Shown: positions 6,303-36,200, numbered from the stretch's first letter. The stretch: 64,000 nt of DNA from Setoptus koraiensis (GCA_048013815.1 CM106585.1:5084001-5148000), one strand, 5' to 3'. The notes: a model not told the origin generated them from the letters alone. A program made the numbers and translations.

Positions 6303-8500
6303 TCATTTGGACCTCCGTTCGCCTGTATCATTTGAAAATTCTGGATCTCGGATCAATTGACATACGCAACAGCTCGGAATAAAGAAGGTGTCAACTTCTA
6401 GTCGTCCATTGTCTCCATTAACAGCCAGAAGTTTCTTTTTCAAGTATCTCTGCTTGCTGTTCAGTATAGAATAATCATCGAAAATAATCAATTGAGATAA
6501 TTGTAAATTGTGTGGCCTCTTCTTTCTGATGAGTTGTTAACTATTAAGATGAGAAGTTTAGAAAGTGCCTAGAATTTTCGACGATTACTCACCATTGGCT
6601 AGAAAATCCGAATGGCAGAGAAATTTGATCCGAACAAGGTCCCAGTGGATCCCTAAATATTTTCAGAAATATATTTTGAGGCCAGAGGATTAGTTTGAAA
6701 ACACATATAGGAATTGCTTAGTTTTGAAGTGATTTACTCACAAGCAAATATCAACTCGTATAATTTGTCTGACTTGCGGATCCTTTTCTGGCGTGTTCAC
6801 TATATACTTCCATTCTCGTTTATCATTAAGCTATTAGTTGGAGTGTATTTCGAATGAAGTGGTTCAATTTTGGTAATAATGGTGCCAACAGCGAAATTTA
6901 TGTCATAATAGGAACATCAATCACGGGAAATTTCGCATAGAAACACAATTAGAATTTACTGTCGTATACTTACAGCTGCTCTCGGTGTGATATACATTGA
7001 TTTGACCAAACACAATGGACTTATTTGTATTGATTTCGGCAGATCAATCGACTCTGGATCATTCAAAAGCTCGCCACTTGCTTGCCTCTTTGATAGTCTG
7101 ACCGATGAGCCCTGGCGCGCATCTGATCTTCTATGGGCGGATCTGATTTCGTCGCCTTCTTTTATATTGCCACTATTTTCACTTCTTTTAGTTCTAAAAT
7201 TCTTGTAATTATCCATTTCGGCTAAAATTGTGTCCTCTCTGTGTCTTCTTATGGACAATAGTCTTCTCGAATCGGGTGAATCATTACCGTATCCTATTGG
7301 TTTCTCCTCTTTTGTTGTTGAGTATGTTTCATCATCCCTGCTATAGTCTTGCTGCTCATCTTCGTCATAAGAAGAATTCAATTTTCTTTGGTAATCTATT
7401 GGAGAGTAATGCTGGCGATCAGATTTGATCTTCGGATGCGCCTGATCTTCTACGAGGTATTTAACTTTTGTCTCGTAAACAACAACGCCTGTGCCCAATT
7501 TGTTATTTGCATGATCACTTGTCCGTCTGGCGTGTCTGAGAACCGGTTCTGGATCATTTTCTCTTTCGTCTGAGAACAGACTGTCCAATGTGAAGCCGAC
7601 AGCGATGCTGGCGAAAGACTTTTTAGCTGCTGTTACAGCACGATAAATCTCATCACTGGGATATGAGTGAATTTGATCACAGACAGTTCTTCCCGTTCGT
7701 GGACAGTCTTGATTTTGATTGGGTTTGAAAATCTTTCTTTCAGATGTTATTGGAGCACTTGGAATTATTGGCTGACCAACAATTAGTATAGTGTCGGGCT
7801 CTGGCTCAGCCTCATAAGTTGGCTTGGAGTAATAAGGATTGTTCATCAATGAAGGAATAGCTTGTTGTTTGTATCGTCTATGATAATGTTGTTGCTTGAG
7901 ATTGTCATCAATTAAAGTTCTTAACGGACTCGAATAATTGATGAAAGGACTGATGTTAACCCTTGATTTTTGTTGTTCATTTAAGCTGTTCGTCGTTGAA
8001 CAATCGGGGCAATCTTTATTGATATAATCACTATTATTTGGAGGAGCAACTCTTCGATGGTTGTTGTTATGATGTACTGATGATGGATGTATAAAAGTCT
8101 GATGACCCATGACTATGTTATTGACGGGACTAAGTGTTTCAGCCGACGAATAGATGATTATAGTAGAAAAAATTAACATCGTAATTACGGAGGAGATTTT
8201 TCTGATGAAAAACAATTTCTTATTAACACTATTATGTGATGACGACGGTGATATTCTTTTGCAAATCGATTCGATCAATTGAGATAGCTCGCTAGTGTCG
8301 CCGAGTGAAATTACAACACGAGAAAGTTCTCTTAAAGCTTGTCGATTATCATATTGAACATTGGATAATGATGACATGGTCATAAATTGCGTCTTCTTCT
8401 TATGATTTTCAGATATTGTTGACATTTTTCTTATAGAAGTAATTGATACAATAGATCCATAGTAATGATATCCACCTGATGCTTCTTTTAATTTTTCCAT
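6303..8500 (-). CDS. Spaetzle/neurotrophin-family Toll ligand (spz5-like); exons 8500-6974, 6830-6742, 6652-6593, 6456-6303
   Basis: Spliced cystine knot PLCLVKSMYITPRAA|LNDKREWKYIVNTPEKDPQVRQIIRVDICL|DPLGPCSDQISLPFGFSSQC|KQRYLKKKLLAV...DTFFIPSCCVCQL with 7 Cys. Prodomain motif CPRTGRTVCDQIHSYPSDEI; basic cleavage sites RTKR and RLSKR. All splice phases are consistent. Confidence 0.9.
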
Positions 8501-9879: not shown

Positions 9880-10860
9880 ACACGAGCTCCGCGATTCAAC
9901 AGATGGTTTGATGGTCGCGGTCAGTTTGCAGTGCATTTGTCCATTTGGTGAGATAGAATATGAAACAAGCCTCTCGCACTACCTACTAATCGCATGTAAG
10001 CGATTGGAGGCACGTAGCGGTATCATTGCTGATCTAGGCGCCAGTTAGACCATCAGTGGTCAGTGGCGCAGATTAACGGTGTGCCCGTGGTGTCAACATG
10101 GCGCTTGCGTCCGTCAAATCGTTTGACTCAAATGGCTGGGCGCCAGTTGCTCGTGGCAATCAGTAAATATCAATATATATGAATGTGTATCAATATACAT
10201 CAATATATATCAATGTATATCGGCCATAAGCGACCCGTAACGGCGTGTTTGTGATTGCCCGTCGGGGGCCCCACAAGCAGCGACAATTTCTCGGCTTTTT
10301 GAGCAAAAGTGTGTCGCGTTTGCGATTGCGTTGCCAGGCGCGTTGTCGCATTTACTTGTTTGCGCTTGCGTAACTTGCGCCACTTGGATGCACTTGTAGT
10401 TGTGGGCCTCAGATTTGCGCGCTGTAATATATTTATCTATATAGATTGGACTTGTTTGTGCGAGGCTAGGTTTGAATTATGGCTGCCAGCTCATATGAAA
10501 GATGACGCAAATTGCGGGCCCAACAAGCGCCCCAAAATTGCGCCTAGTCCGGCGATAGCCAAACAAGTGCACTGTTCGAGAATTGGCGCAACCGGAGGGG
10601 CTCAATTCGAAAGTGGGCACCAGCAACGACAGCCAGAACATGTCAAGAATATCTTGCGGAATAGTCCAAGGCTCAACGAACACACACACTATTGGAAAGC
10701 GTAAAACGCAAGGCAAAATGACAAGTGGGTCTGGAAGGCAAGTTACACATTTAGTTAGACACAGCGAAGAAGCGCTTTTATAGCGATGGACACAGTTGAG
10801 TTTTGGCCCCACAACGAGCAACCAGTTTTAGTGTCACGAACAACAGTAAGTAGCACATCA
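9880..10860 (+). repeat. Non-coding module copy A (homologous to copy B at ~22050-23990)
   Basis: At least 7 collinear shared blocks, e.g. GGAGGCACGTAGC 10006/22491, TTGTTTGCGCTTGCG 10356/22990, GGCTAGGTTT[G/A]AATTATGGC 10464/23156, AAACAAGTGCAC 10561/23293. Boundaries approximate. Confidence 0.8.
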
Positions 10861-11926
10861 TGTAATTTATTAAATTATTTATTTAATTTGTCATCTTGTA
10901 ATTTATTGACCGTTTGAGTCGGCACCGACAGGCTGCCGACGAAAAAACAAATGCCCAAATTATGCTGTTTGCACGTCCAGTAGCCATTGCGAGCTTGTGG
11001 CGATTGAGGACAGTTTTGACGGATTGGCGATCGCCAATCTTTGCTCGGCTTGGTGCGCTTGACACAATTCAATTGACACAATTCAATTGACACAATTCAA
11101 TCGACACAATTGAATAGTGTGACTAGCGCCGCAGTCACCTGTTGACATGGTAGCGGCCTCACGCGTCCGTTGAGCGCATTTCGCGCAATCTCACCAAAAT
11201 CAGCTCGCACAATTCCATGACGATTCCATGTAACCAAACGGCAAGCTCGTGTCTCATGCCCGTGCCACATCAATGATATGATGCTGGCATAAAATGCCCG
11301 AAATCGTATCACAAATCAGCGAAAAGCGATTTGATCTGAATTTGGGCCATCGCTCCACTGACCGGTTGTGCATTGACCGACATTGATGCAGCGGTGCCCA
11401 ATTCAGTGGGCCTTCACCAGCTACGATGACTTGGTGAAGGTGTCGCCGGGCCGGACGGATCGCACTTGCGATGGCGAGCGACTGTTCGAACGACAATCAA
11501 GCTGGTTCGAACCAAGATTTGATTGCAGTTGCAGCGATAATTTCGCTGCGAAATAACAAGCGCCAACCACGAGCAACAAAACCATTGCCTACTGCGCTGG
11601 CTGTATTACTCGAACGGATGGCACGAATTATACCGTGCCATGTGGTATAAACATGTATTGCATGGCTTGGGCAACAATCCGGGCATAATCCGTGGATAAA
11701 TGGCCAGTTATCCACGGCCATCTCGCGCACGAGCGTGCACACGAGCAACGATGTCATTGCTCGTGTGCACACTGAACAATGACAATGTATGATAACGATA
11801 AAACTTTTTGTGCCCGTTTAATATTTTGGCCCCACAAAAACTGTCGCTGTTGTGCGCTCGCTGTTGTGTGAGTGGCGTCGCTTAACCGCGTTTAGCCGTC
11901 TGAGGGACCGAGGGACCTTCAACCGA

Positions 11927-13654
11927 TGACAACAATAGACAACATAACGGCCCCACTAACGGCGATCAGCTTGTGTCAAAAGCCCAGCCACAAGCTCGCC
12001 CCCAATAATGTGCGCACGAATGGAATGTGCACAGTGTCTCGGTAGTCATAACATGACAAATAATTAATTTCCATTCTATATCTCTATAACTGAGGCCAGC
12101 AGCACCTTTTCTCTATACAATCTTAACGGACCGTGTAGAGTCTTGAGTCGCAAGGCACGGCACGCGAGCTTGCCGACAATGAGTGTTGGCAATATTATGA
12201 GCGTTATTTGGTCGCCATAACGATCAATCAAACAAAGTCTAAATTTAGTTTATTAGTTTGCCTATTATTAGTTCGGATGCTTGCTAGTCAACTGCTAGCT
12301 GACTCTGCTAACTGACTCTGCTCACTGACTCTGCTCACTGACTCTGCTGGCTCAACTCGCCACACGGGCCACCAGTGACCAGTTTGACCAGAACGGGGCA
12401 CCAAGAATCCGCTGCTTCACAAATCGTTGGCCAGCGAGAGTCACGTGAGTTTTTATTGATTTTGATTGAGATTTCACCAGCAGGCTGCATTGTCACGCGA
12501 CTCGCATCGCGCGCGACAACGCAAATCGACCATATGAGCATATGAGCTCCGTGAGCTCTGTGAGCTCTGCTAGAGGCCAAAAGATATGCTCACCTCGATC
12601 GGCCTCTATCACACCTAGATGCTCAGCAGCATCGATTGGTGGTGTCACAATAAGCGGCACTGTAATGCCATTTGCAATGGGTCGACTGTCGAAACTCGAC
12701 TGTCAACCAACGAAATTCGCAAGTCCGCTCGGCTCGACCGGATATACTATACGGATATATTTCGTTGGATTTAGATAAAAAATGGAGTAACTGGTGTGTG
12801 CTCATGTGCGCACAAATATTGTGCAAAACATTCGAGAAAAATACAACCAAAATACAATACCGCACACAAATACCGGTATTAGAGACGAGCAAAAAGTTGC
12901 TCGGCAATCATTTTCTCTCTCTGTCAATTACGGCCCGACAGGGGACAGTTTACCGGTTGAATAAGCGTTCTTTCTGGCTGCTGTGGCTGCTCTGGCTGCT
13001 GTGGCGAGATGGCCAAGATCAATTGGACAACAAACAATCGCTGCTGTGGTCCGTCCATAAACTGCCGCGCTCTCTATATTACGACACCAATTTGATGACA
13101 AAGTGCCAAATTGTCTGCACCATTCACCGCCGAGCACCATTCACTGCCAAGCACCAACCAACGACGAGCACCAACCAACGACGAGCAACAACCAACGACG
13201 AGCAACAACAACAATAATAATGGCGATAGCGTTTTGTTTGCCAGTGTTTAATGGTGTCACACAAACACAAACTCCCGTAGACCATCCCTCATGAGCGATG
13301 GTGTCAACTGAGGAGCGTGCAAACCGATTTGTTGACGCCAGAGTCAGTGACAACAATAGACGTCATACATTACATAATGGCGATGATCAATAACAACCAT
13401 CAACCCATGTTAACTGACAACGAGCTGAGCCGCCGAGGGCGAGCAATAAAAATTGCCAGCAGCCCGAGAAAAGAATGTCTCTCGGTCGGCCTCTCGGTCG
13501 GTAGTGATAACATCGGCAAATAATTAATTTCTATTCTATATCTCTAAAACTAACCTATATATTATCTATATGACAAGCACGCATGGCTCGTATGGCGAGC
13601 CAAAATGAGCCTGTCTGCCGTACCCTCAACATCCGACGTGACGATCAATCAAAC
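11927..13654 (+). repeat. Diverged direct duplication, ~11927-12233 vs ~13348-13654 (offset ~1.42-1.46 kb)
   Basis: TGACAACAATAGAC 11927/13348; CAAATAATTAATTTC[C/T]ATTCTATATCTCTA 12057/13517 (30 bp, 1 mismatch); ACGATCAATCAAAC 12220/13641. Confidence 0.85.
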
Positions 13655-14556
13655 TAGGAGCAAACTAAGTTTACTCTACTATTCGGTTCAGTACTCGCTT
13701 ATTAGTTAACTGACGATTTTTGTTCACCCCACAAACAACAAATATTGATGCAGACATTTCGGCACGCCTAGAACTTCTAGGCTAGAAGGTAAACTCACAG
13801 TGTCTTCTCGCAGTGACATCGATTTCAAAAAAACTCTTCACTAAATTGATTGTTCCGATCGAGTTGGCCGACAAATTCGAGCCTCTTTGCATAAACCCGC
13901 AAAACGAACAGTTTATGCAAAAATGGCAATCTTCTGGAATTATTTGCAGAAATTCATGCCTGTCCTATGCCTGTTAGACACCCACCCCGAACATCCGGAT
14001 ACGGCCGAATTTCAATTTCCTATTTAATGCGCTTGCTTGACACACGATGGGACTAAATTTTCCACTCTGGGACTGGATAACCCAACTTTCCCATTCCAGT
14101 TAGTTCTCTTGTTAATACATTGGCAATGTTTTTTCTCTTTGCCTCACTCGACCAATCTTTTTTCCCTGATCCCTGATTTTTCCACGAAGGTCTCTACTTC
14201 TTAGTGAACGGTATTTATCCATCCCATAGGAACATCTCGGAGTCAGTGTGTACCAAGATGTGTATTATCATAGTTGCAGCGGTCCTATTTTCGGCCCTAG
14301 AGTCAAGTCGAAATCTTTTCTTGCAGTGCAATCTATTCTTAGCGACATCAGTGACATCGTTTAGCATATAAACAAAAACGTCACACTGAATTAGTAGGAT
14401 AAACAAATTATCTGTAAAAACAATTAGAAATTCAGTGAAAACATGACAAAACAACAGCAACAGCAACAAAAAGAGCAGCAATAACATAACAACAAGTCAT
14501 ATGAACATTCGCTCTCATGTTTTTGTCGCTCAACTAACTAAAGAACTCTGCACACT

Positions 14557-17500
14557 ATGACCACCACCATAGAAAAGAAATCATTACAATCTAGCGGTAA
14601 TGGTATGGCTAGAACAACAACAACAGTAACAACCACCACCACTACGGGAGCACCAAAAACAACAGCCAGATTGTCGCGGAGCAATCATCAGCGAAACAAA
14701 TATTTTTCGTATTTGAAGCATCGCCCCAACAACGCAATAGATAAAAGCAATAAAACTAACACAGAAACAGAAGAATTTGATCATGATAAAGACGATGATC
14801 AAATGGGCCGTCAGGTAGACGCTGCACAACAAGAGCAAGAGCGAAAAGAGGAGCAAACGGCGCCGACTGGCCATCAGCAACCAGTGCAACCTCATTTTGG
14901 TCCCATGAAACAATTTTTGGCCACCTATTTCAATCTTTCATCAACAAACAACAAAAGTATTACCACAAACAACACCCCGATTCATCGTAATGTAGATCAA
15001 AATTTAGATAGAGCGACCACTGCAACAGCAACAAAGAACAGCAGCAATTCAAAGAAGAAAAAGTGCATTAGTGTTCCGGCGACCCCAGTTAAAAGTTTGA
15101 TATGCAACAATAATGATGGTGCCGCTGTTCGATTCACTTCTCAATCACCACCGAAGGTGCTAGAGCAACAACATCAGCAACGGAAACAGAGAAAATATTT
15201 TTCTTGGTTGAATATATTCAACAACAATGGCAGCGATTCGGGTTGCAAGTTGGCCGCGAAACAATCAACATCCGAGAAAATTTCAAACAAGATCTTGTCC
15301 AACAACATAAGCATCAACAACAACAGCAATAGCAGCGATCACAACAATGCTAGTGATGTTGCCGCAATTAATTCAAATAATAAATCAAATCACGATGAAC
15401 CAGCAAAGGAATCAGTGAAAAATAGTGATAGTGGCAAGCAGCTTGCGAAGAGAACCGCCAAAAGAAGCAATGTCAAAATAATAGTCGATACCCTAAGCAA
15501 AGAAGTACAAACAGAGGAGGCCAGCCAAAACAATAGCACCTGTAATAATTTACTCAAGACTACATTCCAAAATTTAAGCTATGACTCAAGTGCCCAAAGA
15601 GAATGTCCCATGTCAACGGAGAAATTTCGTGAGCATGGTAGAAATCTGATAGATTATATCAGCAATTATCTCGACACCATTGATAAAAGACGCGTGACAC
15701 CGTTGAATATCGAGCCTGGCTATCTTAGGTCCCTATTGGATGTTGATGCGCCTAAGGAGGGTGAAAAATTCGAGGATATAATGAAAGATTTTGAGAATCA
15801 TATAATGTGCGGAATAACCCATTGGCAGCACCCCAGATTTCACGCTTATTTTCCAGCAGGCAACGCGTACGCGTCCATATTGGCAGATATGCTGTCGGAC
15901 GCCATCGGATGCGTCGGTTTCTCCTGGGTAAGTTGCTCTGTAATCGAGCCTCTTGACTCGAAATTAATTCAACAATTAATTTAATTGATTTAATGTTCTC
16001 ATTAAATTTGTATATATTGTTTTGCTTTGAATGAAAGGCGGCCAGCCCCGCGTGCACCGAACTGGAGATTATCATGCTAGATTGGATGGGAAAAATGATA
16101 GGATTGCCGGAGGAGTTTTTGTGTTTGTCGGGCGCCCAAAGCAAGGGAGGCGGCGTAATACAGGGCTCAGCTAGCGAATGTGTTCTAGTTAATTTATTAG
16201 CGGCTCGGCATGTCGCCATAGACAAATTGCGCAAAAAGTATCCACAAACGCCCGACGGTGTCCTATTGTCTAAATTAATTGGCTACTGTTCCAAGGAGGC
16301 GCATAGTTGCGTCGAGAAGGCGGCCATGATTGGTTTCATAAAAATGCGAGCTCTCGAAACGGACGAAAAATACTCATTGAGGGGCGAAATCTTGAGCAAG
16401 GCCATCAAACAGGACAAGGCCAACGGTTTGGAGCCGTTTCTGGTGAGCGCGACCCTAGGTACAACGTCATGTTGCTCATTTGACAATCTAGAGGAAGTGG
16501 GCCGCGTGTGTCAGGAGCACGATATTTGGTTGCACGTGGACGCTGCTTACGCGGGCAGTGCCCTCATTTGTCCGGAATTCAAATATCTGATGAAGGGCAT
16601 CGAGCTGGCCACCTCTTTCAATATGAACCCCAACAAATGGATGCTGATCAATTTCGACTGCTCCCTCATGTGGTGAGTGCCTCAGCTACACTGTCAATCA
16701 ATGACACGATAATGATTACATCCCACTGTGATGATCACACTGTGTCGTATCATATCGATAGAAAACCATCATGACGATTAACTTAATTTGCTCACTGCTT
16801 GAAATTGTTTTGCCTCATATCATGCCATCCAGGGTGAAGGATAGATTTCAATTAACTAGGGCATTCGTTGTTGATCCACTCTATCTGCAACACAGTTTCT
16901 CTGACAAGGCCATCGATTACAGGGTGAGTGCATTATCCCTAAACACCCAATTATTGCATCAGTGAATGTGTACAGTTACAATAATAACAATTTTGTATCT
17001 TGTCAACTGAACTAACACCAACTTTTCCAACCAACATACTTAGCATTGGGGCATTCCTTTGAGCAGAAGATTCCGAGCTCTAAAATTGTGGTTTGTCATT
17101 AGAAACTACGGCGTCGAGGGCCTGCAGCGATACATTCGCAACGTAAGTAACCAGCGGAAACGGCCAATTGAAATTGCCGATATCGTGTTCGACAGACATT
17201 CCACTCACCAGTGTCTATTTCATCTTCTCGTCTTCTCTCACAGCACGTTGCTTTGGCCAAGAAATTCGAGTCACTCATCAGGGCCGATTCTCGTTTTGAG
17301 ATAATTACTCAAGTGGTGCTGGGCCTGGTGTGCTTCCGTTTAGTGGTGAGTACACAGAGTGCAAATATGTAAAATACCAAATATCAAATATATGTGGCGA
17401 TACGATCAACTTATTAAATGAAACGCAAACGTTACTAGCAAAACTAACTGACTCTACTCGACTTTTTCAAAAAACCGATGCCTCGATGCGAACAGGGCTC

Positions 17501-18518
17501 CAATGCTCTCAATCAGCGCCTTCTGTCAAATATTAACGCCTCCGGCAAGTTGCACATGGTGCCGGCCTCATTGAATGGCCGCTACATAATTAGATTTTGT
17601 GTTTGCTCGCAAGAGGCATGCGACAAGGATGTTATATTTGCCTATCAATGTATATCTGAGTTTGCAAGCGATTTATTTGAGTCCATACGAGCCGGAAGAG
17701 AGAGAATTAGAGCTGTCAGTCAACAAAACACAATAGACGTATCGGACATATCGTTGCATACGCAACAATCGGCCTCGGCAGATCTGGGATTGGCTGGCTC
17801 TGCCAATCATCATCATAATATGCTAATTTCTGCACATTCTGCCTCAACAAGTGCCAGTGCAACCAGCGCAACGGGTCCAATTAGAGGTGCCCAGACACCA
17901 ACAACGATAACAGGTAAAGTGGCCCCCATAGCGGCAGCGAGTGCAAACAGTGGAGTTACCGCGACGACTAACGAAGAATCGCCAGGCATGAGAGCAAAGT
18001 CTGCACTAAGTGCCGGAAATACTTCGGTCACAACAACAACCTGTTCACCTAACTCAGTTAGAACGTCTCCCATGATGTTGATGCACAACCAACAACAACA
18101 AGATCATCAGAGCACCAGCCACTTGGTTCGTGGTGCCTCGAGTAAGCTATTGAAACAGCGCCAACAGCAACAACCAGCGACCAATTCAAACAATGACGCC
18201 AGTCCAAATATCAGTGAAGTAGACGAGGATCTCGAAGAGGAACTGATACTTGACAACTCGTCGTGTTTGCACGATGACATTGACGACGACGAAGACTTGG
18301 GTGCCCTGTTGTTGTCGGACGAAGAATCAAAATCTGGTGCCAACGAGGCAGGTGAGGCCGTTGACGAAGTTTTTACATTAGAGAAAAAGAACAAAATGAG
18401 CCTGAGATACAAGCGTGGCTTTTTTGTCAGAGTTGTGTCAGACCCCAAAATGTACAGGGTTTCCATTTCCGGTGACATAGGACACTCGTCCGGTTCCATT
18501 GGATCAGCGGGCTCATGA
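14557..18518 (+). CDS. Tdc2: Tyrosine decarboxylase (PLP-dependent group II, Tdc2-like); exons 14557-15927, 16038-16672, 16833-16923, 17044-17142, 17244-17345, 17496-18518
   Basis: [21 protein letters not shown]|[24 protein letters not shown]-lysine motif [17 protein letters not shown] (NPNK as in Tdc rather than NPHK of Ddc), IDYR|[16 protein letters not shown], and the Tdc2-type C-terminal [10 protein letters not shown]. Five GT-AG introns are in phase. The exact start codon is uncertain. Confidence 0.93.
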
Positions 18519-19089
18519 ATCACAATAAACGGATCAATTTATACGGATCAATTTATATGCCAATCAATCAATGGGGCAACAGCAAGACTACTATTACTAC
18601 CGCTTATCATGTTCACCCGATATTGTATGAGCAATGACACTGTTCTCTAGGTTTTACTATTATGAATAAAATTGCTCACTCTGCTGACCGAACGAAATGT
18701 TCAAACTTCTTCGCACCGTCTCACTGCGTCGAAATAGATCTTGTTAGTCGTTGTTATGAATTTCATAGAACGAAACGACACAATTATTTCTGTTTGTTGT
18801 TGTTTTTATTCTTAGATGCGGATGCGAAAATTCCGAGTTGGAGCTCCGAAAATTCAGAATCAGATAGATGACGCCTGGCGGAGCATGATAATGCGCATCC
18901 AAGGTCGCGAGTTTACCGGAAACTATAACAGAGACTATTGGTTGTGACAAGCACGATGCAGTTAACAACGGTCTAATAGGCATCCTCCGAAATACGACAC
19001 CGTCTTGCTGATTGTATAGTGGATTATAACCGAAATCTGTTGTGCTACGACCGCCTAACGAAGATGGGCCGGGCGAGCTCGCTCAAGTG

Positions 19090-19690
19090 TTTTTTTTTTT
19101 ATTAATAGTAATGATAATAACAATAATAATAGTGATAATAGTAATAGTATTAGTGGTAGTGAAGGTGATGCTACTGCTGTTGCTGTTGCTCCGGGACTCC
19201 TATCTCCATAGGAGTCTCCGTTGCTGTTGCTGTTTCTATTGCTGATTCTGCTGTTGTTACTGCTGTTGTTACTGCTGTTGTTACTGCTGTTTCTGCTGCT
19301 GCTGCCGCATGAGAGGCGTTGGTGGCTACTATGCCTAGACCGTCGCATCTCTCATAGAGAGATTGCGACGGCCTGTTGGCATAGTAGTCCGCCAGAACGT
19401 GCATGACCGGTTGGAATCGCGGGTGGGGTCCAACCGGTCTGCTGGGTTGCTGCGGTTGTCGCTGCTGTTGGTGCTGTCGGTGGCGCTGGCGCGCATTGCG
19501 CGGCTGGTTCTGGTTCTGGTCCTAGTTCTGGTGCTGTTGTTGTTGTTGTTGTTGCAGTTGGAGCCGCCGGTTGGCCCGCTGTCGCTGCCGTTGTTGTTGC
19601 CGCGGTTGTTGTAGCCGTGGTTGTTGTCGCCGTGGTTGTTGCTGCCGTGGTTGTCGCTGCCGTGGCTGTTGCTGCTGCTGTTGTGGTTGC
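19090..19690. repeat. Low-complexity simple-repeat tract ((CTGCTGTTGTTA)n, (GTT)n, GCCGTGGTTGTT-like units)
   Basis: Read directly; it produces the poly-L/Q/N ORFs seen on both strands. Confidence 0.8.
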
Positions 19691-19792
19691 GGGGCCGCAA
19701 TGTCATAAATATTGCAGTGGGGAGCTATGTTCCAACTCATTTTTCCCCACTGCAATATTGATGATGCTGATGATGATGATGATAATTCTAAT

Positions 19793-20452
19793 AAGATTCT
19801 AGATTTGATACTCTTTGATTTTTTGAAGAAAAACAATGATTGATGATTTTCACAAGAAGAAAAAGAAGAAACGAAGACCCAAACCAAGAATAACTAGTCG
19901 CCAGAGGACCTCAATCAAACGAGTCGTGGAGACTTTGAAAAGGACCGGCGAGAGAGTGACCTCAAGGAAAGTGCACAAAGAGTGCGATCTTCAGCACGTC
20001 ACTGAACGAACAGTGAGAAATCACATGAGGTCACTCAATTACACATACAAACAGGCCAAAATATTATTAAATTGACGCATCAACAGCGCACGAAACGCGT
20101 CGAATTGGCCAAGTCCTGGATCTCAAACTCGCACCCATGGTCGAGAGTGGTTTTCGCCGACGAAAAGCGGTTTAATCTGGACGGACCCGATTCCTGGAGC
20201 TCCTGGTGTAGAGAAGGAGGAGTTTCCACTCGCAACAAGGGCCAACAGGGCGGTGGCAATGTCCAGGTTTGGGGCATGTTAATGTCAGACCACTCGTTGT
20301 CGGTCTTCCGGTTGAACCAGAGATCCAACTCCAAAGATTATATTAATTTCTTGAAGAAGGATATCAAGTCTGTATTGGACGCGTTTCCAATCCGCACAGT
20401 TCAAAAGTTAGTTTTTCTTCAAAAAATCAGAAAGTATCAAACCTAGAATCTT
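19793..20452. repeat. 42-bp inverted repeat (19793-19834 / 20411-20452) bracketing the transposase fragment
   Basis: The reverse complement of the left arm matches the right arm at 39 of 42 positions. Confidence 0.92.
19836..20446 (+). mobile_element. Truncated, frameshifted Tc1/Tc3-like transposase remnant
   Basis: An HTH-like part (VTERTVRNHMRSLNYTYK) frameshifts near 20072 into WSRVVFADEKRFNLDGPDS...QQGGGNVQVWG...NSKDYINFL, matching Tc3 VVFSDEKKFNLDGPDG. It ends before the second catalytic Asp (QDNA). Confidence 0.85.
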
Positions 20453-21699
20453 CAAACTTCACCCGAAATCCCATCTATATGCAGGTAAGTATGTGTGAAA
20501 AAATGAACAAGAACGCTCAACCCAAACCCGAGATACTTACTGTTTCATTAATCTTTTCCAGCAGTGTATACGTTTGCGAACCGGCCGAAGAGGCGCGCGA
20601 CACGAGAGACCTCTTTCGTCAGCCAAACTCATCTCAAAGAGCACAGTTTTGGCCCCGAACAAAGCCGAACATTGTTGTTGGCTGAATTTGTTGGTTGCTA
20701 GAGACAAAAATCATTGTTGAAATCATTGTTGTCATTTGAAAGAGAGCCGGCGATGAAACTTGAGCGCATAAATTGTGCCTGTGGAAGATGAGTTTTGCGC
20801 AAAAATGTTCAAACAATCAAAAGATACAAGTTTGGCCTGATTGGCAAGCTAGTGAATTGGTGAAGCCAACAACAAGGTGAACCCTTTCTGCAAATGGCTC
20901 CAATTTCGATCTGACTCTGGCCCACGTGAACCACTCTGTTTCTGAGGCGCAAGAAAAGATTTGGCAAAAAGCCGGAAAACGGATATTGCACGAGATGAGA
21001 GAAAGTGAGCAGGAAATAGAATTGCATGATCAGTTTTGACGCATCGAGCCACGAATGAGGAATCGGAATTAGTTAGGGTTTGTTGTGGGCACTTTTGCGC
21101 CATCAATTGGTGAACGATTCGGTTCGGAGTGGGCACAGTCCGTCACGTCGGCTCGTGCAAGTTTGGCAACGGGCTGAAACGTGATTATTTTGGCTTGACA
21201 TCTCTGAATTGTAACGCTGATGATGAGTCACGTTGCCAGTTGGTGATTTTTTGAGCAGGGAAATTGATGAATCTTGACGATGGCGCTCGTGTTGTCGGCC
21301 GCCAGTCAGCTCGTCTGACCTTGGCCAATCCTCGCCGCTTGTGGTCTCGAGCGGGCGTTATGTCACGTTTGTCGCAACTCGTGCAGACAACTTTCGCAGA
21401 GTCAACTTGTGAAGCGATATGTTAATTTCGCAGGTATTTATAGAAAGAACAGTGCTGTTTTGTTCATCATTTGAGCGCTTTCGAGCAACATAGCGACAGT
21501 GATGACTTGTGCGGATTTGTGCGCGAGTATCATGTGACTGCCTCTTGCTAGATGCTGTCGGGGCCCGGCGAGACGGGCTCTCGGAACTGTTGGCTTCGCA
21601 TGCGAAATCCCACAGTTCCGAGCGAACGTGAGCGGCTGGCCAATTGGTGCAGAGGCAATTTTTTTGAGAAATAAAAACGTTACATAATGTACAACATGT

Positions 21700-23990
21700 G
21701 CAATTGCATACACGGCGAGTCCAATTCAACTAATTAGTTTGCTTGTTATCCGGCAACTTTAAACATTTTCACGCACGCCAGCTCTCGTTTCGGTGGCGCA
21801 AAATTGCCCGAAATTGCGCGAAATTGTGCGAAATTGTTCATTTCGCTACACATTCACCAACTTTAGACATGGCATATCTAGCTGTTCGCTATATGCTCAA
21901 TATGACGTTGGAAGTGGCTTCATTTTTCGCCCGATTTCCGCGGCTCACAGCCACGAGCCGTTCGCCTGCGGCTCGCCGCTGCAAATTAGACTCTCCTACC
22001 ATCACTCATGTTAATGATGTCCGCTCGTCACAGGCCACGGGGCACCCTAATAGAGCTCACATGACGGTCGTTACGTAACGGGGGGGGGGTGGCCCGTTGC
22101 GTAACAGTGGCAGAGGTGGCGCCACTTGTTTGCGCGCCCATGGCGGTCAGTTTCATCTTCTGTCCGTGTGTGTCGCTATAAATACATACCTGTGTATAGG
22201 TGAGTAGGTGGTAAAGTCGCCTTGCACATGCCAAGGCGACCTTAGTAAGGTCACCTAACAATTGTTATGTAACAATTGTCTCGTTAGAGGCGCACGAGCG
22301 CGCCCACCGGCCGTTGGCCGCTCCGATGGGCGGCCTTTGTTTTTCGTGGGGCCCGCATAATGGGCCGCGCCATTTGAATATGAAGCGGGCCGGGCCCCAC
22401 GATTTGAATATGAAGCGGGCCGGCGCCGCCAATCTAGCGCAATCCGGTGCAATCTAACGCAATCTGATGCAATCTGATCGGCGACCGATCGGAGGCACGT
22501 AGCCGGCACAGTAGCGGCCATTGGGTTGCTGATTGCGGGGCCCGCGCCGGCTTGTCGAGTGCGGCCCGCGCCGGCTTGTCGATTGTGGCGCCCGCTGGAT
22601 TGCCGATAATTCGGTGAGTCAGCGGGCGCCAGTGGGCGCCAGCTTGACCATCAATGGTCACCAGCGGCGCAGATTAGCGGCGTCCGCGCAACGTCAGCGC
22701 GCGCGCCCGAGCCCGTCAAATGGCCGGCTGATGGCGGCCATCGATCGGGGCACATATCGGCCACACGTAAGTTACGTAACGTGTGTGCGTGTGTGTGCGT
22801 GCGTGTGTGTGATTGCTTGTCGGGGGTCCGACGGCGTAACGAGCCGCGACACTGGCCCTCACCGAAAGTGTCTCGTGATTGCGATTGCGTTGGCCGCCAT
22901 TCGCCCGGTGCGACGGGCCGGGCGGCCCGTCGCACCGGATCTGCGGATTTAGCTGGTGGCGCGGGGTATTTATTTGTGCGGCACAACTCTTGTTTGCGCT
23001 TGCGCCGCTTGCGCCACTGTCAGCGCCGTTGCGGGAGCCCCAGATTGGTGCGCTCCAATACATACACTTATATGTATGTATGTATGTATATATTGGATTT
23101 GTTTGTGTTGTGACGCAACGCAAGAGGCGCGCGCTCGCTCGTGTATTGTAACGGGGGCTAGGTTTAAATTATGGCCGCGGGCGCACAGCGGCGGCGCTGT
23201 GCCGCTCTGTCGCCGTTGTCGATGCCAGATAAAGATAACGGGCCCAGCTAACAAGCGCCCGGCTTAAGATTGCGCTCAGTGTGATTGGCTGCAAACAAGT
23301 GCACACAACTCGGACAACAGCAACTTCAACTCCGACAACAACTGCAACTTCAACCACAACTGCCACTGCAACTGCGAAAGCGCCCCCTTCCAAAGTGAGC
23401 ATCGACAGCCAATATCGCGCCACTGGCACCCCGGCCAGTCGCAGCCCGAAGCCCGCAGCCCCAAGTTTGAATCCCGCAGCCCCAAGTCTGAATCTCGGAG
23501 CCCGCAGCCCGAAGCGGCCCAATCATTTCGGCCCGCTGACCAGCGCCGCACAGCGCCCCCACTGCGCCCCTGCTCACTGGTTGGAAGCTGCACACACACA
23601 CAAAATGGCGAGCAGACTGGCGAGCAGGTCACAAAGACAAGTTACACAATTGGTGGGCCGCGGCGCATGTTTAGCGAGCCAAGGTTACGCAACTGTCAGT
23701 GCGACATTGACATCGGCACAACGGCCGGCACAACAATAGCGCCCAACAATAACGCGCATATATCACCCAGACAGAACAGCAAAGTGCAGCAAAGTACAGC
23801 AAGGTATCGCATAGTATCGCACAGCGTGCGACGACAGTGGCACAACTCTTCGGCGCCCCGACCGTCGGCGCAGCCAGTTATTACGAGTGTCTACGAGTGC
23901 AAATTCGCAAGCAATGGAAGCGCGTTCCAGTGTCCCGAACGACAACTTCTAATTAGTGTCACACGTAAATGTAAGTAAATCACCAAGTGC
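21700..23990 (+). repeat. Non-coding module copy B, GC/CpG-rich and expanded by local tandem duplications
   Basis: Its 22050-23990 part is collinear with copy A; its 21700-22270 part is collinear with copy C. Boundaries approximate. Confidence 0.8.
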
Positions 23991-25879
23991 CGCAACAGTG
24001 CACACTGCTGCACAGTTTGTCGTTGGCCAGCGCCAACAACAAACTGTGCGGCGGCGCCCCGACCGCCAACGACCGCCAACGACAGCCACCGAGCGCGACG
24101 CCAAGCCGCGCAAAACCGCGCCAAACCGCGCAAAACCGCGCAAAACTAATTAAACAAATCGGCCCCACAAATGGCCAATATCCGACATTTGAGCCGATGC
24201 TCAAATGTCACGCGATCGAAAAATTGCACTGATTGCATTCGAATGGCACCGGGCACGTACGCTTGCGATGCGCCGGGCATCGGTACAAGCTGGGCATCGG
24301 AACAAGCTGAGCATCGGAACACATTGGGCACCCGAATACGTAGATTGGGCACCCGAATACGTAGCGAGCACGTAGCCTGCACACATGGAGTGAGCGGGCG
24401 AACCGGAAATTGTGTCATCGCTGTATCATCGTGGTGTGTCGTGTTTGGTTCAAGGCGACAACGGATAGCGGCAATAAGTTTTTGGCGCACTCGCCACCGA
24501 TTGTTTACCTCCCCTGACAAGCGGCTCGCTGCTACCATTTGCTCGCGAGTCGCCCGCTCGCTTTGTTTGCCGTTGCTGCCGGCTGCGAATATCGGCCCCA
24601 GCAAGCGGCCCCAGCGAGCGGCATGTGTCACGGCCGTGCGCGGCCAGTGCATGTCCGCCGCGCATTCAATTAGACAGTGGCTAGATTGTTGCGATTGGCC
24701 AATGGATGCGCCTTATCTCCGGCGTTTCCATCAGTGCTCGTGCCTGTCCAGCCAACTTGCATACGTCTTTGCCCTGGGCAATGCGCGCCCTCGCCGCCAC
24801 AAGAGAGCGCGCCAAGTGGCGCACACAAAACCGACCAAGGGGCCCTTCCACTCGGCTAGACGCTGTTGTCGGCCCGACGCTGTTGTCGGCCCGACAGCGT
24901 TGTCTCGCAACGAGAGCACTTCCACTAAAAGTAAATCCAAGTCTAATTGAACTTCCACCGGCTGCATATTGCTGCTCTGTCGCGGTGCTTGGCTCTCGGC
25001 GGCCCACACTAGCGAGCCATGAGCCAACAATATCGCAAGTGGACACATTCTTACATAATTCTTACATAATATTGTTACCAGTTAGCCAGTGCTATATTGG
25101 TACTGTACTGCAAAACAGCTGTACATATGCTCGTGTGCACCTGTACGTACCTGTGTACGTACACCTTTGAGCTGGGCGCGTGCAATATGCAAACCGGCGC
25201 CACCGGTATATTTGTGTTGTTGTGTTTGTTTACACGGACACAACACGACTCAAAATAGCAGTTTATTTGATGTTTGTTGTTGCAACAGCAAACCAATAAA
25301 CTCACCGTGCAAGCTATCGCCCACAAGCTGCTGCCAATGCCGCCGCAGTCGCTCAATCTGTCACTTGGCAACACGCCAGTCAAGTTGAACTGGCCTCAAC
25401 TGGCCCCAATCTCTCATCTATTCGACTCACGACTCACAATTTGAGAGTCACAAAAAATCACACTCGACAATACGGTCTCGGCCAGCTGATATATTTGTTT
25501 GCGCGCAGCCATTCTGCTGACAAACGCAATGTGTGACGAATGCAACGCTGATTGTCTTATTTATTCCGACCTGTCACTTTTGTGTCGGCAAATCAAAATT
25601 ATGTCACGCCGGCCCCATCAATCAGACATCGCGGGAAATATATTGCTAAGAACCGATACATGCATTGATGTGTCTGTATGATTTATTTGAGTGCATTCAA
25701 TATAAACTCACATTGTCAGCTATCGCGATATTGCAACGGCCATGTTGTGCAACAACAACGCAAAAACAATAATAGTGCCCCACTTAGTGCCCCACTTTTT
25801 TCGTCACGAACAAACTCGGCCCTATAAATCCTGGCGTATGTGGCAATAGTTTTGTGCATTATAAATCGAAAGATACAGC

Positions 25880-26440
25880 AACGTCAATTCAATTAGTCAC
25901 TGTTACTGGTCACTGTCGGCTTGCTGTCGGTTTGCTGTCCGTCTAATGTCCGTTCACTATCGGTTTGCCCTTAATTTCCTCTAATGTATCAATCAATGTA
26001 ATATTATCGTGAACGGCAGCGCCGTTCCAATTGCGCCACACCATTCAACGGTGCTGCTGTATACCATGATAGTGCATATATCATGTGGATATCATGCGGA
26101 TATCGTGTGGATATCGTGTGGATATATGAGCTAGTGGCAAGTTGATGTGTGTCATACTATGTAGTTGCACTCGGCTCACTTGGCATATTAGAATCCCCAC
26201 AAAACGATCACTCATGTTAATGATGTCCGGTCATCATAACGAGCCAGCTGGACACATACCGACCACAAACAGTGGCCGAGCCCGTTGGTGCCGGTGGATT
26301 AAATGTGGCCAGACACACTTGTTTCTGTTTTGCGGTCGTGTTGGTCATTTTTATCTTCTATGTCTGTGTTTGTGGCCCTCACACTGGCCACTATTGTTAC
26401 ATGACCATCATTATTATTATCATATATGCCAACAACAATT
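25880..26440 (+). repeat. Non-coding module copy C (partial direct repeat of ~21700-22270, offset ~4.2 kb)
   Basis: Exact 23-mer ATCACTCATGTTAATGATGTCCG at 22001 and 26207; a similar GGTCA.TTT.ATCTTCT..GTC.GTGT block at 22145 and 26343. Confidence 0.8.
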
Positions 26441-33299: not shown

Positions 33300-36200
33300 G
33301 GTCCTCTTTAGCTAATGCGGTTGCAAGGCGGCGTCGTAGCCCGGCGAGTGTCTTGTTGTGCAGTCTGTCTGTCTGTCTGGCTGTCTGTCTGTCTGGCTGG
33401 ACGAGTGGCAAGTTATAAATGGCCGCCCCAATTGCCTATTCCAGGTCTATTTATAGCTCCGTCTGCAAGTGGTCCGCTCCGTTTATGCTGTGTGTGTGTG
33501 CGTGGCTCGAACCCGAATTCAGGTTTCACAATCGTCGGGCGAAATCGAGAATGCGAATTTGTCGTACACAAGATATTTGCATACGACAAATTGGGTATTT
33601 GTATTTTGTATTTGTGCATGCAAAATGATGATGATGATGATAATTAGACGCTTGCGTAACGATGATAAGTGGCGGCACAATTAACAATTGAATTGAATCA
33701 TTTACTCTCGCGTGTTTACAACCCAGCTCAAGGCCAGACACTAGATGAACTTGGATGGCGCTCGCGCAATGCACAGAGCCGGCCTCATTAGGCGCTTTGA
33801 TTGTAAATTGCCATTGTCTAAGCCGGCGCAAGTGTGGCGACTATAGCGACCATGGCACAACCGCAGCGAATCGTTGGACAGCGAATTGTCGTGCAGCGAA
33901 TTGTCGTGCAGCGAATTGTTGTGCGGCGAATTGTTGGACAGCAACTGGCTCAACTTGTGACCGGCAACTTGAGTCTAGACACTCGTGGCCGGACTCAAGT
34001 TGCCAGTCGACGACAATGTAGCGGCGAGCTGGGGGCAACAGGCGGCCCACAGAGCACGGCGGAGTCTCATCTCCTAATTGCGGCCCGTGCTCATGATGAC
34101 ACGCTTGTGTGAACCGTGCCTTCGCATAACGTACACATGAGCGCCACCATGCTCCATTTTGGCGGCCATATTTGTTTTGTTGGCTTATGATTGGTTGCAG
34201 CATGCACGGTTGGCGACAAGACGCACACACACACACAAACACAATTCGGTGCAGCAGTGCAGCGAATTGTGCACCGGACGCGCCGAATGCGCGCGTGTAT
34301 TCTATTTCTGACAACACGTTTGGCGTCCCTCGGCACCAGCTCGGCAGCCGACTCGGCACCAGGCCAGCAAGCGACCGGCAGGCACGGTTGCATATTTGTG
34401 CTGCAGCAACCAACCAACACACGATCTGAGGCACACGCACCACGGTGCTGCAGCAACGGGCACAGGTTCCACCGGCTGGGTGCCTTACAACGACGTTAGT
34501 GTACGGCGCATGGTGTATGCACGCCATGACAACTGTGGTACTGACAACGCTCGATAAATTGTCGCAAGACGAGTCGCACACAACAAAGCGATCACTGGCG
34601 CCGCCGCCGCTTGTTACATAGGCGCGCGCGTTGCGTTGGTTCGCTGTCGGCCGGCGCGCACGCTACACACCACGTTGCACACAACAAGCGGGCACCAATG
34701 CAACGAGCGGCCAGATCAGACTAGATCAGATCAAATTAAACACTCGCTCGCTCACAGTGGCGACCTTTTGGGACACGTTCGATTGGCTGCCAGCATGTCC
34801 AAACCATACGCGCGCAAATTCCCTGGCCTCAACCCCTGCCCACCCCCCACTGCACCCTTTCGCCCATTGGTATGCGCGCGGCGTGCAAGTGTCGCGATGC
34901 CGACGCCTATTGGTCGCACCAACAACAAGCAGCCAGGCGGTTGCGTGCTAACACAGGCACGCACACACGAGCCACTAGAGTGGCTGGTAACTAGAGCATA
35001 TTGAAATGGGTCGCTTCATTTCGGTTGTCGCAAGCCACGCTGACACTGGCGATGTGGCGGCCAAGGCCAACAGTCAGCCTGAGAGAGGTGCGCACCAGCG
35101 GTGGCACCAGCGGGAGGTCCGCGGGCATAGATAGGTGTCGTGTCATGTTTTGCCAACTTTTTTGCCGCCAATTGATCGAATCAATCACGATTAGGGCGCA
35201 GCGGTAGCGGCCGACAATGGCATTAATATTTAGCATAGAACGTTCGACGGTGCGCACAACAAGCTCCAATTAATCTCACTCCGGTTCCCGTGAAGCGGCC
35301 ATACTTGCGGCCAAACTGCCAAACTATACTGCATTATAGCCGCCATAGCATGGCGGCCATAGCATGGCTATGGGCGACACTCGCTCGTACTGGCTAGACA
35401 GCGGGCCTCTGGCCAATCGGCGCGCAGGCACACACACAGTTTCGTATGGGGGGGGGGGCACAATAATAGAATTATTAAAAGTACAATGCCGACCGCTGTG
35501 CAACTTGATTATGCCATTGCGCATCAATTCAATATTGCGTTCGATCGCACCGGCACACATTGGCGGCGGCCGCGGCGGCCATTTTGCGTGCCATCGAACC
35601 GGTGCTATCGGTGGCATTTGTTCGACACATTAATCGAATTTAAACCAACGATTCGCACAACGCAGTTCGTACGCAGCGGCTCCGGTGCGTTACGGCAGCG
35701 CGCTTTTCATTACGGCCCAATCACCGGCGATATTCATTTAGACGAGCGGCCAGAAATATTTCTCTCTCTATCTCGATGCCTCCCCCGCCAACTTGTCTGC
35801 TCTGGCCCGCGATCAGCCCCACGAGGCCCCAATTATTTTTTCTATCCGAAGGATCCGTTCGGCGCTGAAATTAACTGCCCCATCGCGCAATGATCAATCA
35901 CGCAGTCAGCGGGTGGGGCGCCCCCGCACCCGTCCAACGCCCGGCCAGCGCCACGCATCGGACCCGTCCAGGGAGACATGCGATCCAAATGACGCCGCCG
36001 ACACTTGCACACCAATCGTATCACACTAATAATATCACACAACAATATCGCACAATAATATCACCAGCACAACACTGTCACCGCTCGCTAAATTGTCTAG
36101 CCAATTGGGAGATATGCCAGATTTAATTGAAAGCAACACTGCCGACACTCAACGCCTTTAGCGCATTTGCATATTCATGGCCACATTTGGATGGCAAGAC
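33300..36200. other. GC-rich non-coding block with many short inverted and tandem repeats
   Basis: Hairpins at 33556-33592 and 33958-34009; ~4 copies of the 15-bp unit CAGCGAATTGTCGTG at ~33865-33940; no credible ORF. Confidence 0.55.

What the first reader, a model, noticed from the sequence alone, without database searches (positions are those of the whole stretch)
9880..23990. Two collinear paralogous non-coding modules flank Tdc (A 9.9-10.9 kb, B 22.0-24.0 kb)
Ordered shared blocks (A/B): GCGGTCAGTTT 9917/22143; GGAGGCACGTAGC 10006/22491; GGCGCCAG..GACCATCA.TGGTC..AG.GGCGCAGATTA.CGG ~10038/22635 (keeps a GACCA/TGGTC mini-hairpin); TTGTTTGCGCTTGCG...CTTGCGCCACT 10356/22990; GGCTAGGTTT.AATTATGGC 10464/23156; AAACAAGTGCAC 10561/23293; CAAGTTACACA 10739/23638; TTAGTGTCAC 10828/23953. 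The spacers have diverged beyond alignment and B is about twice as long. Conserved islands in variable linkers suggest selection, as in a duplicated cis-regulatory module or a structured RNA with expansion segments. No shared continuous reading frame. Best candidate for an undescribed system in this window.
Basis: partly seen in the sequence, partly recalled or inferred. Interest (0 to 1): 0.75.

Follow-up and report, generated by a model that had tools for sequence, protein, structure and literature searches.

The report
Old duplicated regulatory DNA flanking Tdc
Two non-coding stretches, one before and one after a mite's tyramine-synthesis gene, are ancient copies of each other that still share about twenty short sequence islands; they are most likely a duplicated gene-control region, which is a known kind of thing and not a new system.

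Summary
A (9917-10852) and B (22143-23977) share a collinear chain of 20 exact blocks of 9-16 nt. The chain scores 214 against 31±11 for shuffles and 69 or less for real control regions, and it is the top outlier among all 1-kb tile pairs in the window. Both flanks are significant on their own. Motif, BLAST and covariance-model searches find only these two copies in the 48.7-Mb genome, so this is not a transposon family. There is no Rfam match and no shared reading frame. Folding energy is no lower than in control DNA, which leaves the structured-RNA reading without support.

The conserved blocks are built from short words repeated in both orientations (TTGCG, TTGTTTG, GCGCCAC). These words are enriched in both modules but not in neighbouring DNA, as expected for a cluster of transcription-factor sites. 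Both copies end in TTAGTGTCAC-N8-GTAAGTA, a donor-like motif, and a rare strong acceptor lies 230 nt before the Tdc ATG.

My best reading is an old local duplication of a cis-regulatory module, possibly a promoter plus a non-coding first exon, kept under selection in both copies. A neutral relic is not excluded. No RNA data or sister-species DNA could be reached.

The parts
9917..10852 (+). Module A: the upstream copy, 936 nt, 48% GC. It ends 3.7 kb before the Tdc ATG.
   Evidence: Collinear chain with B; sequence.
22143..23977 (+). Module B: the downstream copy, 1835 nt, 59% GC. It starts 3.6 kb after the Tdc stop codon and is lengthened by short tandem repeats and B-specific palindromes.
10037..10573 (+). 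Alignable core of A, matching B 22625-23305. It contains the longest blocks: TTGCGATTGCGTTG, CTTGTTTGCGCTTGCG-N3-CTTGCGCCACT, GGCTAGGTTTRAATTATGGC and CAAACAAGTGCAC.
   Evidence: BLAST HSPs; spacer z-scores 2.3-5.8; alignment.
22625..23305 (+). Alignable core of B.
10038..10069 (+). Conserved interrupted palindrome or hairpin in A: GCGCC.GTT.GACCA-TCAG-TGGTC.AGT.GGCGC.
   Evidence: A covariance model built on it finds only A and B in the genome.
22636..22670 (+). The same palindrome or hairpin in B. Its two T-to-C differences turn G·U pairs into G-C pairs on the + strand.
10828..10852 (+). Terminal block of A: TTAGTGTCAC-N8-GTAAGTA, with a donor-like GTAAGTA at 10846. Homology with B stops here.
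   Evidence: The Tdc introns use GTAAGT/GTGAGT donors.
23953..23977 (+). Terminal block of B: the same 10-mer, the same 8-nt spacing and the same GTAAGTA (at 23971).
21975..22142 (+). 5' flank of B, shared with partial copy C but not detectably with A. It contains the invariant 23-mer ATCACTCATGTTAATGATGTCCG (22001-22023).
26165..26390 (+). Partial third copy C. It is homologous to B 21975-22185, including a diverged version of the first A/B block.
   Evidence: Alignment z 9.2. The 23-mer occurs only at these two places in the genome.
14557..18518 (+). Tdc-like PLP-decarboxylase gene between the modules. It has six exons, a 385-aa low-complexity N-terminal extension, and is the only Tdc in the genome.
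14314..14326 (+). Strong acceptor-like site (tcttttcttgcag) 230 nt before the Tdc ATG. It is a candidate partner for the donor at the end of A.
   Evidence: The pattern Y7NCAG occurs only 3 times in 28 kb upstream of 47 ORFs, and one of the three is a verified Tdc acceptor.

Best explanation
A and B are the two surviving copies of an old local duplication of a roughly 1-kb cis-regulatory module. The copies lie 12.2 kb apart, in the same orientation, and occur nowhere else in the genome. I propose that each copy works at the DNA level as a cluster of transcription-factor binding sites.

The conserved islands are made of a few short words repeated in both orientations: TTGCG, TTGTTTG/CAAACAA, GCGCCAC/GTGGCGC, plus one interrupted palindrome. 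Purifying selection would have kept these sites in both copies while the linkers decayed and, in B, expanded through short tandem repeats. The shared sites would give the same regulatory input at two places around Tdc.

Within this reading I favour, at about 40% conditional probability, that each copy is a promoter region plus a non-coding first exon ending at the conserved GTAAGTA donor. In that case A would supply a distal leader for Tdc, spliced to the acceptor at 14326 across a 3.48-kb intron. B would start a separate transcript running into the roughly 18-kb stretch downstream, up to the next ORF at 41849, where no convincing coding ORF was found.

Shown here: the homology, its uniqueness in the genome, the lack of coding potential, the lack of a known RNA family, and the motif composition. 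Inferred: selection, protein binding, transcription and splicing.
For: The homology is far beyond chance, and each flank is significant separately. Only two copies exist in 48.7 Mb by BLAST, three motif patterns and a covariance model.

Flank spacers are at the random level and differ 3- to 8-fold in length, yet perfect 10-13-mers persist in them. In the B/C pair a 23-nt run is invariant inside an alignment of about 65% identity, which I estimate at roughly p = 0.004 under uniform decay.

The conserved blocks are mutually complementary because the same words recur in both orientations. Against dinucleotide shuffles, TTGCG occurs 13 times against 4.2 expected in A and 17 against 10.3 in B. TTGTTTG occurs 3 and 4 times against 0.3. 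GCGCCAC occurs 2 and 6 times against 0.3 and 1.2. None of these words is enriched in four control regions.

The terminal block keeps TTAGTGTCAC, the 8-nt spacing and GTAAGTA, and homology stops there. GTAAGTA occurs only about once per 11-16 kb per strand. A rare strong acceptor lies 230 nt upstream of the Tdc ATG, and that ATG is conserved in a relative.
Against: No transcript, chromatin or binding data exist, and no orthologous DNA could be fetched, so selection is inferred from only two or three paralogous copies.

In the core, the run lengths (16, 13, 13, 11, 11, 10...) are roughly what uniform decay at about 70% identity would give. The motif enrichments were chosen after seeing the blocks, and A and B are not independent samples.

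No paralogous gene follows B. There is no Tdc relic downstream and only one Tdc in the genome.

For the promoter-plus-leader variant specifically: TCAGTY is not enriched upstream of 47 ORFs in 264 kb, 14 sense against 17 antisense, so the Inr-like first block carries little weight. A and B hold 14 and 19 ATGs on the + strand with no strand bias. Other donor-like sites (11868, 12445) could also serve the Tdc acceptor.
Confidence: 0.55

Rival explanations
1. Neutral relic. A and B are leftovers of an old local duplication in duplication-prone non-coding DNA, have no function, and their shared blocks are simply what has not yet mutated.
For: The locus holds other old local duplications: 21975-22185 with 26165-26390, and 11927-12260 with 13348-13710. 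It also has dozens of short tandem repeats. Core spacers keep residual similarity, and the core run lengths fit roughly uniform decay at about 70% identity. No functional data exist.
Against: The flank spacers are fully randomised and differ 3- to 8-fold in length, yet they carry perfect 10-13-mers in collinear order, with p no more than 0.004 for each flank. There is an invariant 23-mer in the B/C pair. The terminal 10-mer, its spacing and the GTAAGTA are all kept. The same short words are enriched in both copies but not in neighbouring DNA. Eriophyoid genomes are streamlined (PMC11879100, PMC7738191), which argues against long retention of 1-2 kb of useless DNA.
Confidence: 0.2
2. RNA-level element. 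A and B are exons of non-coding or leader RNAs, and their conserved blocks act in the RNA through the hairpin at 10038-10069 / 22636-22670 and long-range pairing between complementary blocks.
For: The two-stem hairpin is kept in both copies. All 7 substituted positions in the RNAalifold consensus keep pairing: 2 are compensatory and 5 are G·U to G-C changes that work only on the + strand. The + strand folds somewhat better than the - strand there, z -2.7 and -3.0 against -1.65 and -1.4. The blocks GGAYTTGTTTG and CAAACAAGTGC pair in the MFE structures of both copies. A donor-like end is conserved.
Against: Two sequences give no statistical power: 133 of 500 shuffles do as well. Sliding-window folding z-scores of A and B (-0.3 and -0.6) are no lower than control DNA. 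The B domain closed by the long-range pair has z -0.4. The pair TGGCGCAGATTA with CTTGCGCCACT degrades in B without compensation (derived). There is no Rfam match. Complementarity between blocks is equally explained by one binding word used in both orientations.
Confidence: 0.12
3. Paired boundary or tethering elements. The two homologous, same-orientation modules bracket Tdc and pair with each other to loop the gene out, as the nhomie and homie insulators do around eve in Drosophila.
For: Placement is symmetrical, 3.7 kb before the ATG and 3.6 kb after the stop, in the same orientation. GCGCCAC/GTGGCGC words are enriched, with one AGGTGGCGCC just upstream of B. The resemblance of that word to arthropod CTCF-type sites comes from memory only.
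Against: No insulator-protein motif library or chromatin-contact data were available. The partial third copy C does not fit a simple pair. Flanking placement could be coincidence, since any local duplication lands near something.
Confidence: 0.06
4. Decayed copies of a mobile element, for example a non-autonomous element with B0 and C as terminal direct repeats.
For: B is bracketed by a direct repeat of about 220 bp, 21975-22185 and 26165-26390, spaced 4.2 kb apart. A real Tc1/mariner remnant lies nearby at 19793-20452.
Against: Only two copies exist in 48.7 Mb at every sensitivity tried. No terminal inverted repeats were found at the ends of either module, and there is no coding remnant. The homology of A starts inside the supposed terminal repeat.
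Confidence: 0.04

Closest known systems
Duplicated conserved non-coding elements (dCNEs) retained near duplicated loci. Described in vertebrates, for example in the CONDOR database paper PMC2020477 and in the Fugu subfunctionalisation study PMC1896008, whose abstracts I read; the link to this case is my own.
   Same: These are paralogous non-coding sequences that keep short, highly conserved islands in collinear order while the surrounding DNA diverges. They are interpreted as cis-regulatory modules retained in both copies.
   Different: Vertebrate dCNEs accompany paralogous genes from whole-genome or gene duplication and are defined by cross-species conservation. Here no paralogous gene follows B, the copies are 12 kb apart around a single gene, and conservation across species could not be tested.
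Shadow (redundant) enhancers of arthropod developmental genes (from established knowledge; not tested here).
   Same: Two separate modules near one gene carry the same kinds of binding sites, and one may lie beyond the gene's 3' end.
   Different: Shadow enhancers are defined by overlapping activity and usually lack alignable sequence homology. A and B are demonstrably homologous, but their activity is unknown.
Tandemly duplicated alternative first exons, each with its own promoter (from established knowledge, for example clustered variable first exons).
   Same: The units are in the same orientation and both end at a conserved 5' splice-site motif. There is an additional partial 5' copy (C), and a strong acceptor lies upstream of the Tdc ATG.
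   Different: B lies downstream of the Tdc coding region, so it cannot be a Tdc first exon. No common acceptor exon or transcript is known. The units would be non-coding and unusually long (0.9-1.8 kb) if transcribed from the first block.
nhomie/homie paired insulators flanking eve in Drosophila (from established knowledge).
   Same: Two elements in a fixed relative orientation bracket a single transcription unit.
   Different: No evidence of insulator-protein sites, pairing or boundary activity exists here. This is a resemblance of layout only.

Membership tests
Dispersed transposable-element family | Many copies across the genome | tested here: not met
   BLAST of A and of B, three motif patterns allowing 1-3 mismatches, the 23-mer, and a covariance model all find only the A/B places (for the 23-mer, the B/C places) in 48.7 Mb.
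Dispersed transposable-element family | Terminal repeats or coding remnants of a transposase or reverse transcriptase | tested here: not met
   No inverted repeat joins the ends of A or of B. There are no coding ORFs by codon log-likelihood and no conserved frame.
Known structured RNA family (Rfam 15) | Match to a covariance model at or near the gathering score | tested here: not met
   There are no matches in A or B at E up to 1. The only window match at E up to 0.01 is a sub-threshold tmRNA-like hit at 11524-11784. No tRNAs were found.
Structured non-coding RNA (any) | Folding energy below shuffled controls, and covariation | tested here: inconclusive
   Mean z is -0.3 for A and -0.6 for B, against -1.4 and -0.2 in control regions. 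One hairpin region keeps all its pairs with 2 compensatory changes, but with only two sequences 133 of 500 shuffles do as well.
Paralogous protein-coding exons | A shared open reading frame with protein-level similarity exceeding DNA-level similarity | tested here: not met
   tblastx HSPs switch frames, include stops and score equally on both strands. An ORF of A (131 aa) has no relatives in the protein collection.
Duplicated cis-regulatory module / duplicated CNE | Homologous non-coding sequences with collinear conserved islands | tested here: met
Duplicated cis-regulatory module / duplicated CNE | Islands conserved in orthologous loci of other species | not testable with these tools
The window's genome has no relatives in the genome search. 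Exact-pattern scans of metagenome and genome collections were empty.
Duplicated cis-regulatory module / duplicated CNE | Association with paralogous target genes | tested here: not met
   There is no Tdc relic in 18.6-41.8 kb and only one Tdc in the genome. The Tdc N-terminus and the 1171-aa ORF at 41849 are unrelated.
Duplicated cis-regulatory module / duplicated CNE | Clusters of repeated short binding-type words | tested here: met
   TTGCG, TTGTTTG and GCGCCAC are enriched in A and B against shuffles and not in four control regions. The word choice was post hoc.
Promoter plus non-coding first exon | Conserved 5' splice site at the end of the unit and an acceptor downstream | tested here: inconclusive
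   GTAAGTA is kept at identical spacing in both copies. For A there is a strong acceptor at 14326. For B many acceptor-like sites exist but no identifiable exon.
Promoter plus non-coding first exon | Transcription start and transcript evidence | not testable with these tools
   No RNA data were available. TCAGTY, present in the first block, shows no sense-strand enrichment upstream of 47 ORFs.
Paired boundary elements (homie/nhomie type) | Insulator-protein binding and physical pairing | not testable with these tools
   Only the flanking layout is seen.

The most novel reading that the evidence does not exclude
A and B are a matched pair of architectural elements, created by duplication and kept alike by selection. 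They would pair with each other to loop out and insulate the single Tdc gene from the 20-kb regulatory desert next to it. That would make them a homologous boundary pair in a chelicerate with a miniature genome.
Probability: 0.06. Interest if true: 0.6.

Novelty: new member of a known kind. Interest (0 to 1): 0.3.

Why it matters
If the islands are functional, this locus gives a compact natural dissection of a regulatory module. Two copies have diverged to saturation everywhere except at about twenty short sites, which are therefore candidate binding sites around the only tyrosine-decarboxylase gene (tyramine and octopamine synthesis) of a gall-mite-type genome. That could guide reporter or footprinting work in a group with almost no regulatory annotation. 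It does not point to a new kind of genetic system.

Tried and rejected
- **Transposon family:** rejected on copy number.
- **Known RNA family or tRNA:** none found.
- **Coding exons or micropeptide:** a shared CAAAATG followed by M[T/A]S...RQVT[H/Q]LV looked interesting when read by eye. The tblastx score of that segment is matched by HSPs on the opposite strand, and the frames are not kept.
- **Globally structured RNA:** folding z-scores are no better than controls.
- **Lost second Tdc copy after B:** there is no relic and no second Tdc.
- **Modules as upstream regions of paralogous minus-strand genes:** the 514-aa ORF at 6956-8500 has no paralogue near 19-21 kb.
- **C as a full third copy:** only about 220 bp is shared, and only with B.
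- **Block 1 as a proven initiator:** TCAGTY is not enriched upstream of ORFs in 264 kb.
- **ATG depletion as a 5'UTR signature:** absent.
- **Third occurrences of single blocks within 264 kb:** they are scattered, so they are chance.
- **Identity of the 1171-aa ORF at 41849, a possible target of B:** Pfam and the protein atlas were uninformative.
- **Cross-species evidence:** Two metagenome scans and one genome-collection scan for conserved blocks were empty. The attempt to find relatives through a spurious ORF of A returned nothing, which says nothing either way.


Full report
**Setting.** The window is nuclear DNA of a compact arthropod genome. Coding regions are AT-rich and rich in N/Q/S/T, introns are short (about 100-160 nt) with GTAAGT or GTGAGT donors, and some non-coding islands are GC-rich. 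Earlier notes of this scan call it a gall-mite-type genome. The assembly has two contigs of 24.22 and 24.53 Mb. That fits the published Setoptus koraiensis assembly (47 Mb, N50 24.53 Mb, two chromosomes; PMC11920263), but the identity is not proven.

Between the two modules lies a Tdc-like PLP-decarboxylase gene on the + strand, from ATG 14557 to stop 18518, with PF00282 in exons 1 and 2. Its best named relatives are tyrosine decarboxylases. It is the only Tdc in the genome. I searched exon 1 by reference only.

**Observation.** A chain of collinear exact matches of at least 9 nt scores 214 (20 blocks). Dinucleotide shuffles give 31±11, the reverse complement gives 47, and eleven other regions give 69 or less. 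A/B is the strongest of all 15,750 tile pairs in the window. Each flank is significant separately. Homology runs from 9917 to 10852 and from 22143 to 23977 and then drops to background.

The picture is not uniform:
- In the core (10037-10573 / 22625-23305) most spacers between blocks keep residual similarity, and BLAST aligns pieces at 68-91% identity.
- In the flanks the spacers are random and differ 3- to 8-fold in length, yet they carry perfect 10-13-mers.
- B owes part of its extra length to short tandem repeats and B-specific palindromes.

**What it is not.**
- It is not a dispersed repeat. BLAST, three motif patterns with mismatches and a covariance model find only these two places in 48.7 Mb.
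- It is not coding.
- It is not a known RNA family.
- It is not a globally structured RNA by folding energy.
- There is no relic of a second Tdc behind B.
- The genes on the other strand next to A and B are not paralogous.

**A third, partial copy.** 26165-26390 aligns with 21975-22185, the 5' flank of B plus the first A/B block, at z 9.2. The alignment includes a 23-mer that is identical in both and occurs nowhere else in the genome. At about 65% overall identity, a 23-nt perfect run has a probability of roughly 0.004, so that element looks constrained. Nothing beyond it matches B or A.

**Anatomy that bears on function.**
1. Conserved blocks are complementary to one another because the same short words recur in both orientations. 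TTGCG, TTGTTTG/CAAACAA and GCGCCAC/GTGGCGC are enriched in A and B against dinucleotide shuffles and are not enriched in four control regions. This is what a homotypic cluster of binding sites looks like. The words were picked after seeing the blocks, so the p-values are optimistic. From memory, TGTTTGC resembles forkhead sites and TTGCGYAAC resembles bZIP sites. That is a lead, not a test.
2. A two-stem interrupted palindrome is kept in both copies (A 10038-10069, B 22636-22670). In the RNAalifold consensus of that region, every substituted paired position still pairs, but two sequences give no power.
3. Both modules end in TTAGTGTCAC-N8-GTAAGTA. GTAAGTA is a good donor in this genome and is rare, at about one per 11-16 kb per strand.
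4. A strong acceptor (tcttttcttgcag, ending at 14326) lies 230 nt before the Tdc ATG. This pattern is rare upstream of ORFs, and one of the three hits is a verified Tdc acceptor. The ATG itself is conserved in a relative.
5. The first block contains TCAGTT, but this hexamer shows no sense-strand enrichment upstream of 47 ORFs in 264 kb. I therefore give the initiator reading little weight.
6. A and B carry 14 and 19 ATGs on the + strand with no strand bias. That does not look like an efficiently scanned 5' UTR.

**Interpretation.** The best-supported reading is an old local duplication of a cis-regulatory module, with both copies kept under selection at short binding-type sites (confidence about 0.55). 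Within it, I give a promoter plus non-coding first exon ending at the conserved donor about 40% conditional probability. In that case A would serve Tdc through a 3.48-kb 5'UTR intron, and B would serve a separate transcript heading into the roughly 18-kb stretch up to the ORF at 41849 where no convincing coding ORF was found. The rest goes to an enhancer-type module without its own transcript.

The rivals are a neutral relic (0.20), an RNA-level element (0.12), a boundary pair bracketing Tdc (0.06) and a decayed mobile element (0.04).

**Limits.** The genome has no relatives in the genome search. Pattern scans of public collections were empty.

**Novelty.** Paralogous non-coding DNA with conserved islands is a known kind of thing: duplicated CNEs, redundant enhancers, duplicated first exons. 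This is a clean, statistically solid example in a little-studied mite genome, not an undescribed system.

Noticed in passing
window 19793-20452: A Tc1/mariner-type remnant with 42-bp terminal inverted repeats (19793-19834 / 20411-20452, 93% identical). Its broken ORFs give weak DDE_3 (E 3.9e-5, below the Pfam cut-off) and HTH matches.
   Followed up: partly
window 21975-22185 and 26165-26390: A direct repeat of about 220 bp, spaced 4.2 kb apart, with an invariant, partly palindromic 23-mer (ATCACTCATGTTAATGATGTCCG) found only at these two places in the genome. It is a candidate constrained binding site.
   Followed up: partly
window 11927-12260 and 13348-13710: Another old local duplication, inside the spacer between A and Tdc. 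It forms a collinear chain (z 5.2), and its core (12039-12091 / 13498-13551) is 91% identical.
   Followed up: partly
window 11000-12900: This spacer folds much better than shuffles, with mean z -1.4 and single windows down to -5.2. Read by eye, there are perfect hairpins such as GTGCACACGAGCA...TGCTCGTGTGCAC near 11735-11772 and CCGTGGATAA...TTATCCACGG near 11690-11718. A sub-threshold tmRNA-like Rfam hit at 11524-11784 is probably spurious.
   Followed up: no
window 22905-22938 and 24007-24052: B-specific GC-rich palindromes. The first has two 16-nt arms that are 100% complementary and 2 nt apart; the second has two 21-nt arms that are 90% complementary. A has nothing at the corresponding place.
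   Followed up: no
window 14557-15711: Tdc carries a low-complexity N-terminal extension of about 385 aa before the decarboxylase domain. The extension and its start codon are conserved in one unnamed relative (P0001, 62% identity over 97% of exon 1) but are absent in a more distant one (P0003).
   Followed up: partly
window 22001-25000 and 34001-36000: Non-coding islands of 55-65% GC with CpG observed/expected above 1 sit in a genome whose coding sequence is AT-rich. No convincing coding ORF is seen between about 21 and 41.8 kb, which is a long gene-free stretch for a miniature genome.
   Followed up: partly
window 53404-54029: The 449-aa ORF at 52875-54224 contains tandem repeats with a period of about 69 nt or multiples of it (74-82% identical at the DNA level). 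It has no Pfam family.
   Followed up: no
window 19058-19724 (- strand): Overlapping low-complexity ORFs built on CAG/CAA/AAC repeats have a modest coding score. This could be a small gene or only a repeat.
   Followed up: no
Species identity was not otherwise checked.
   Followed up: partly
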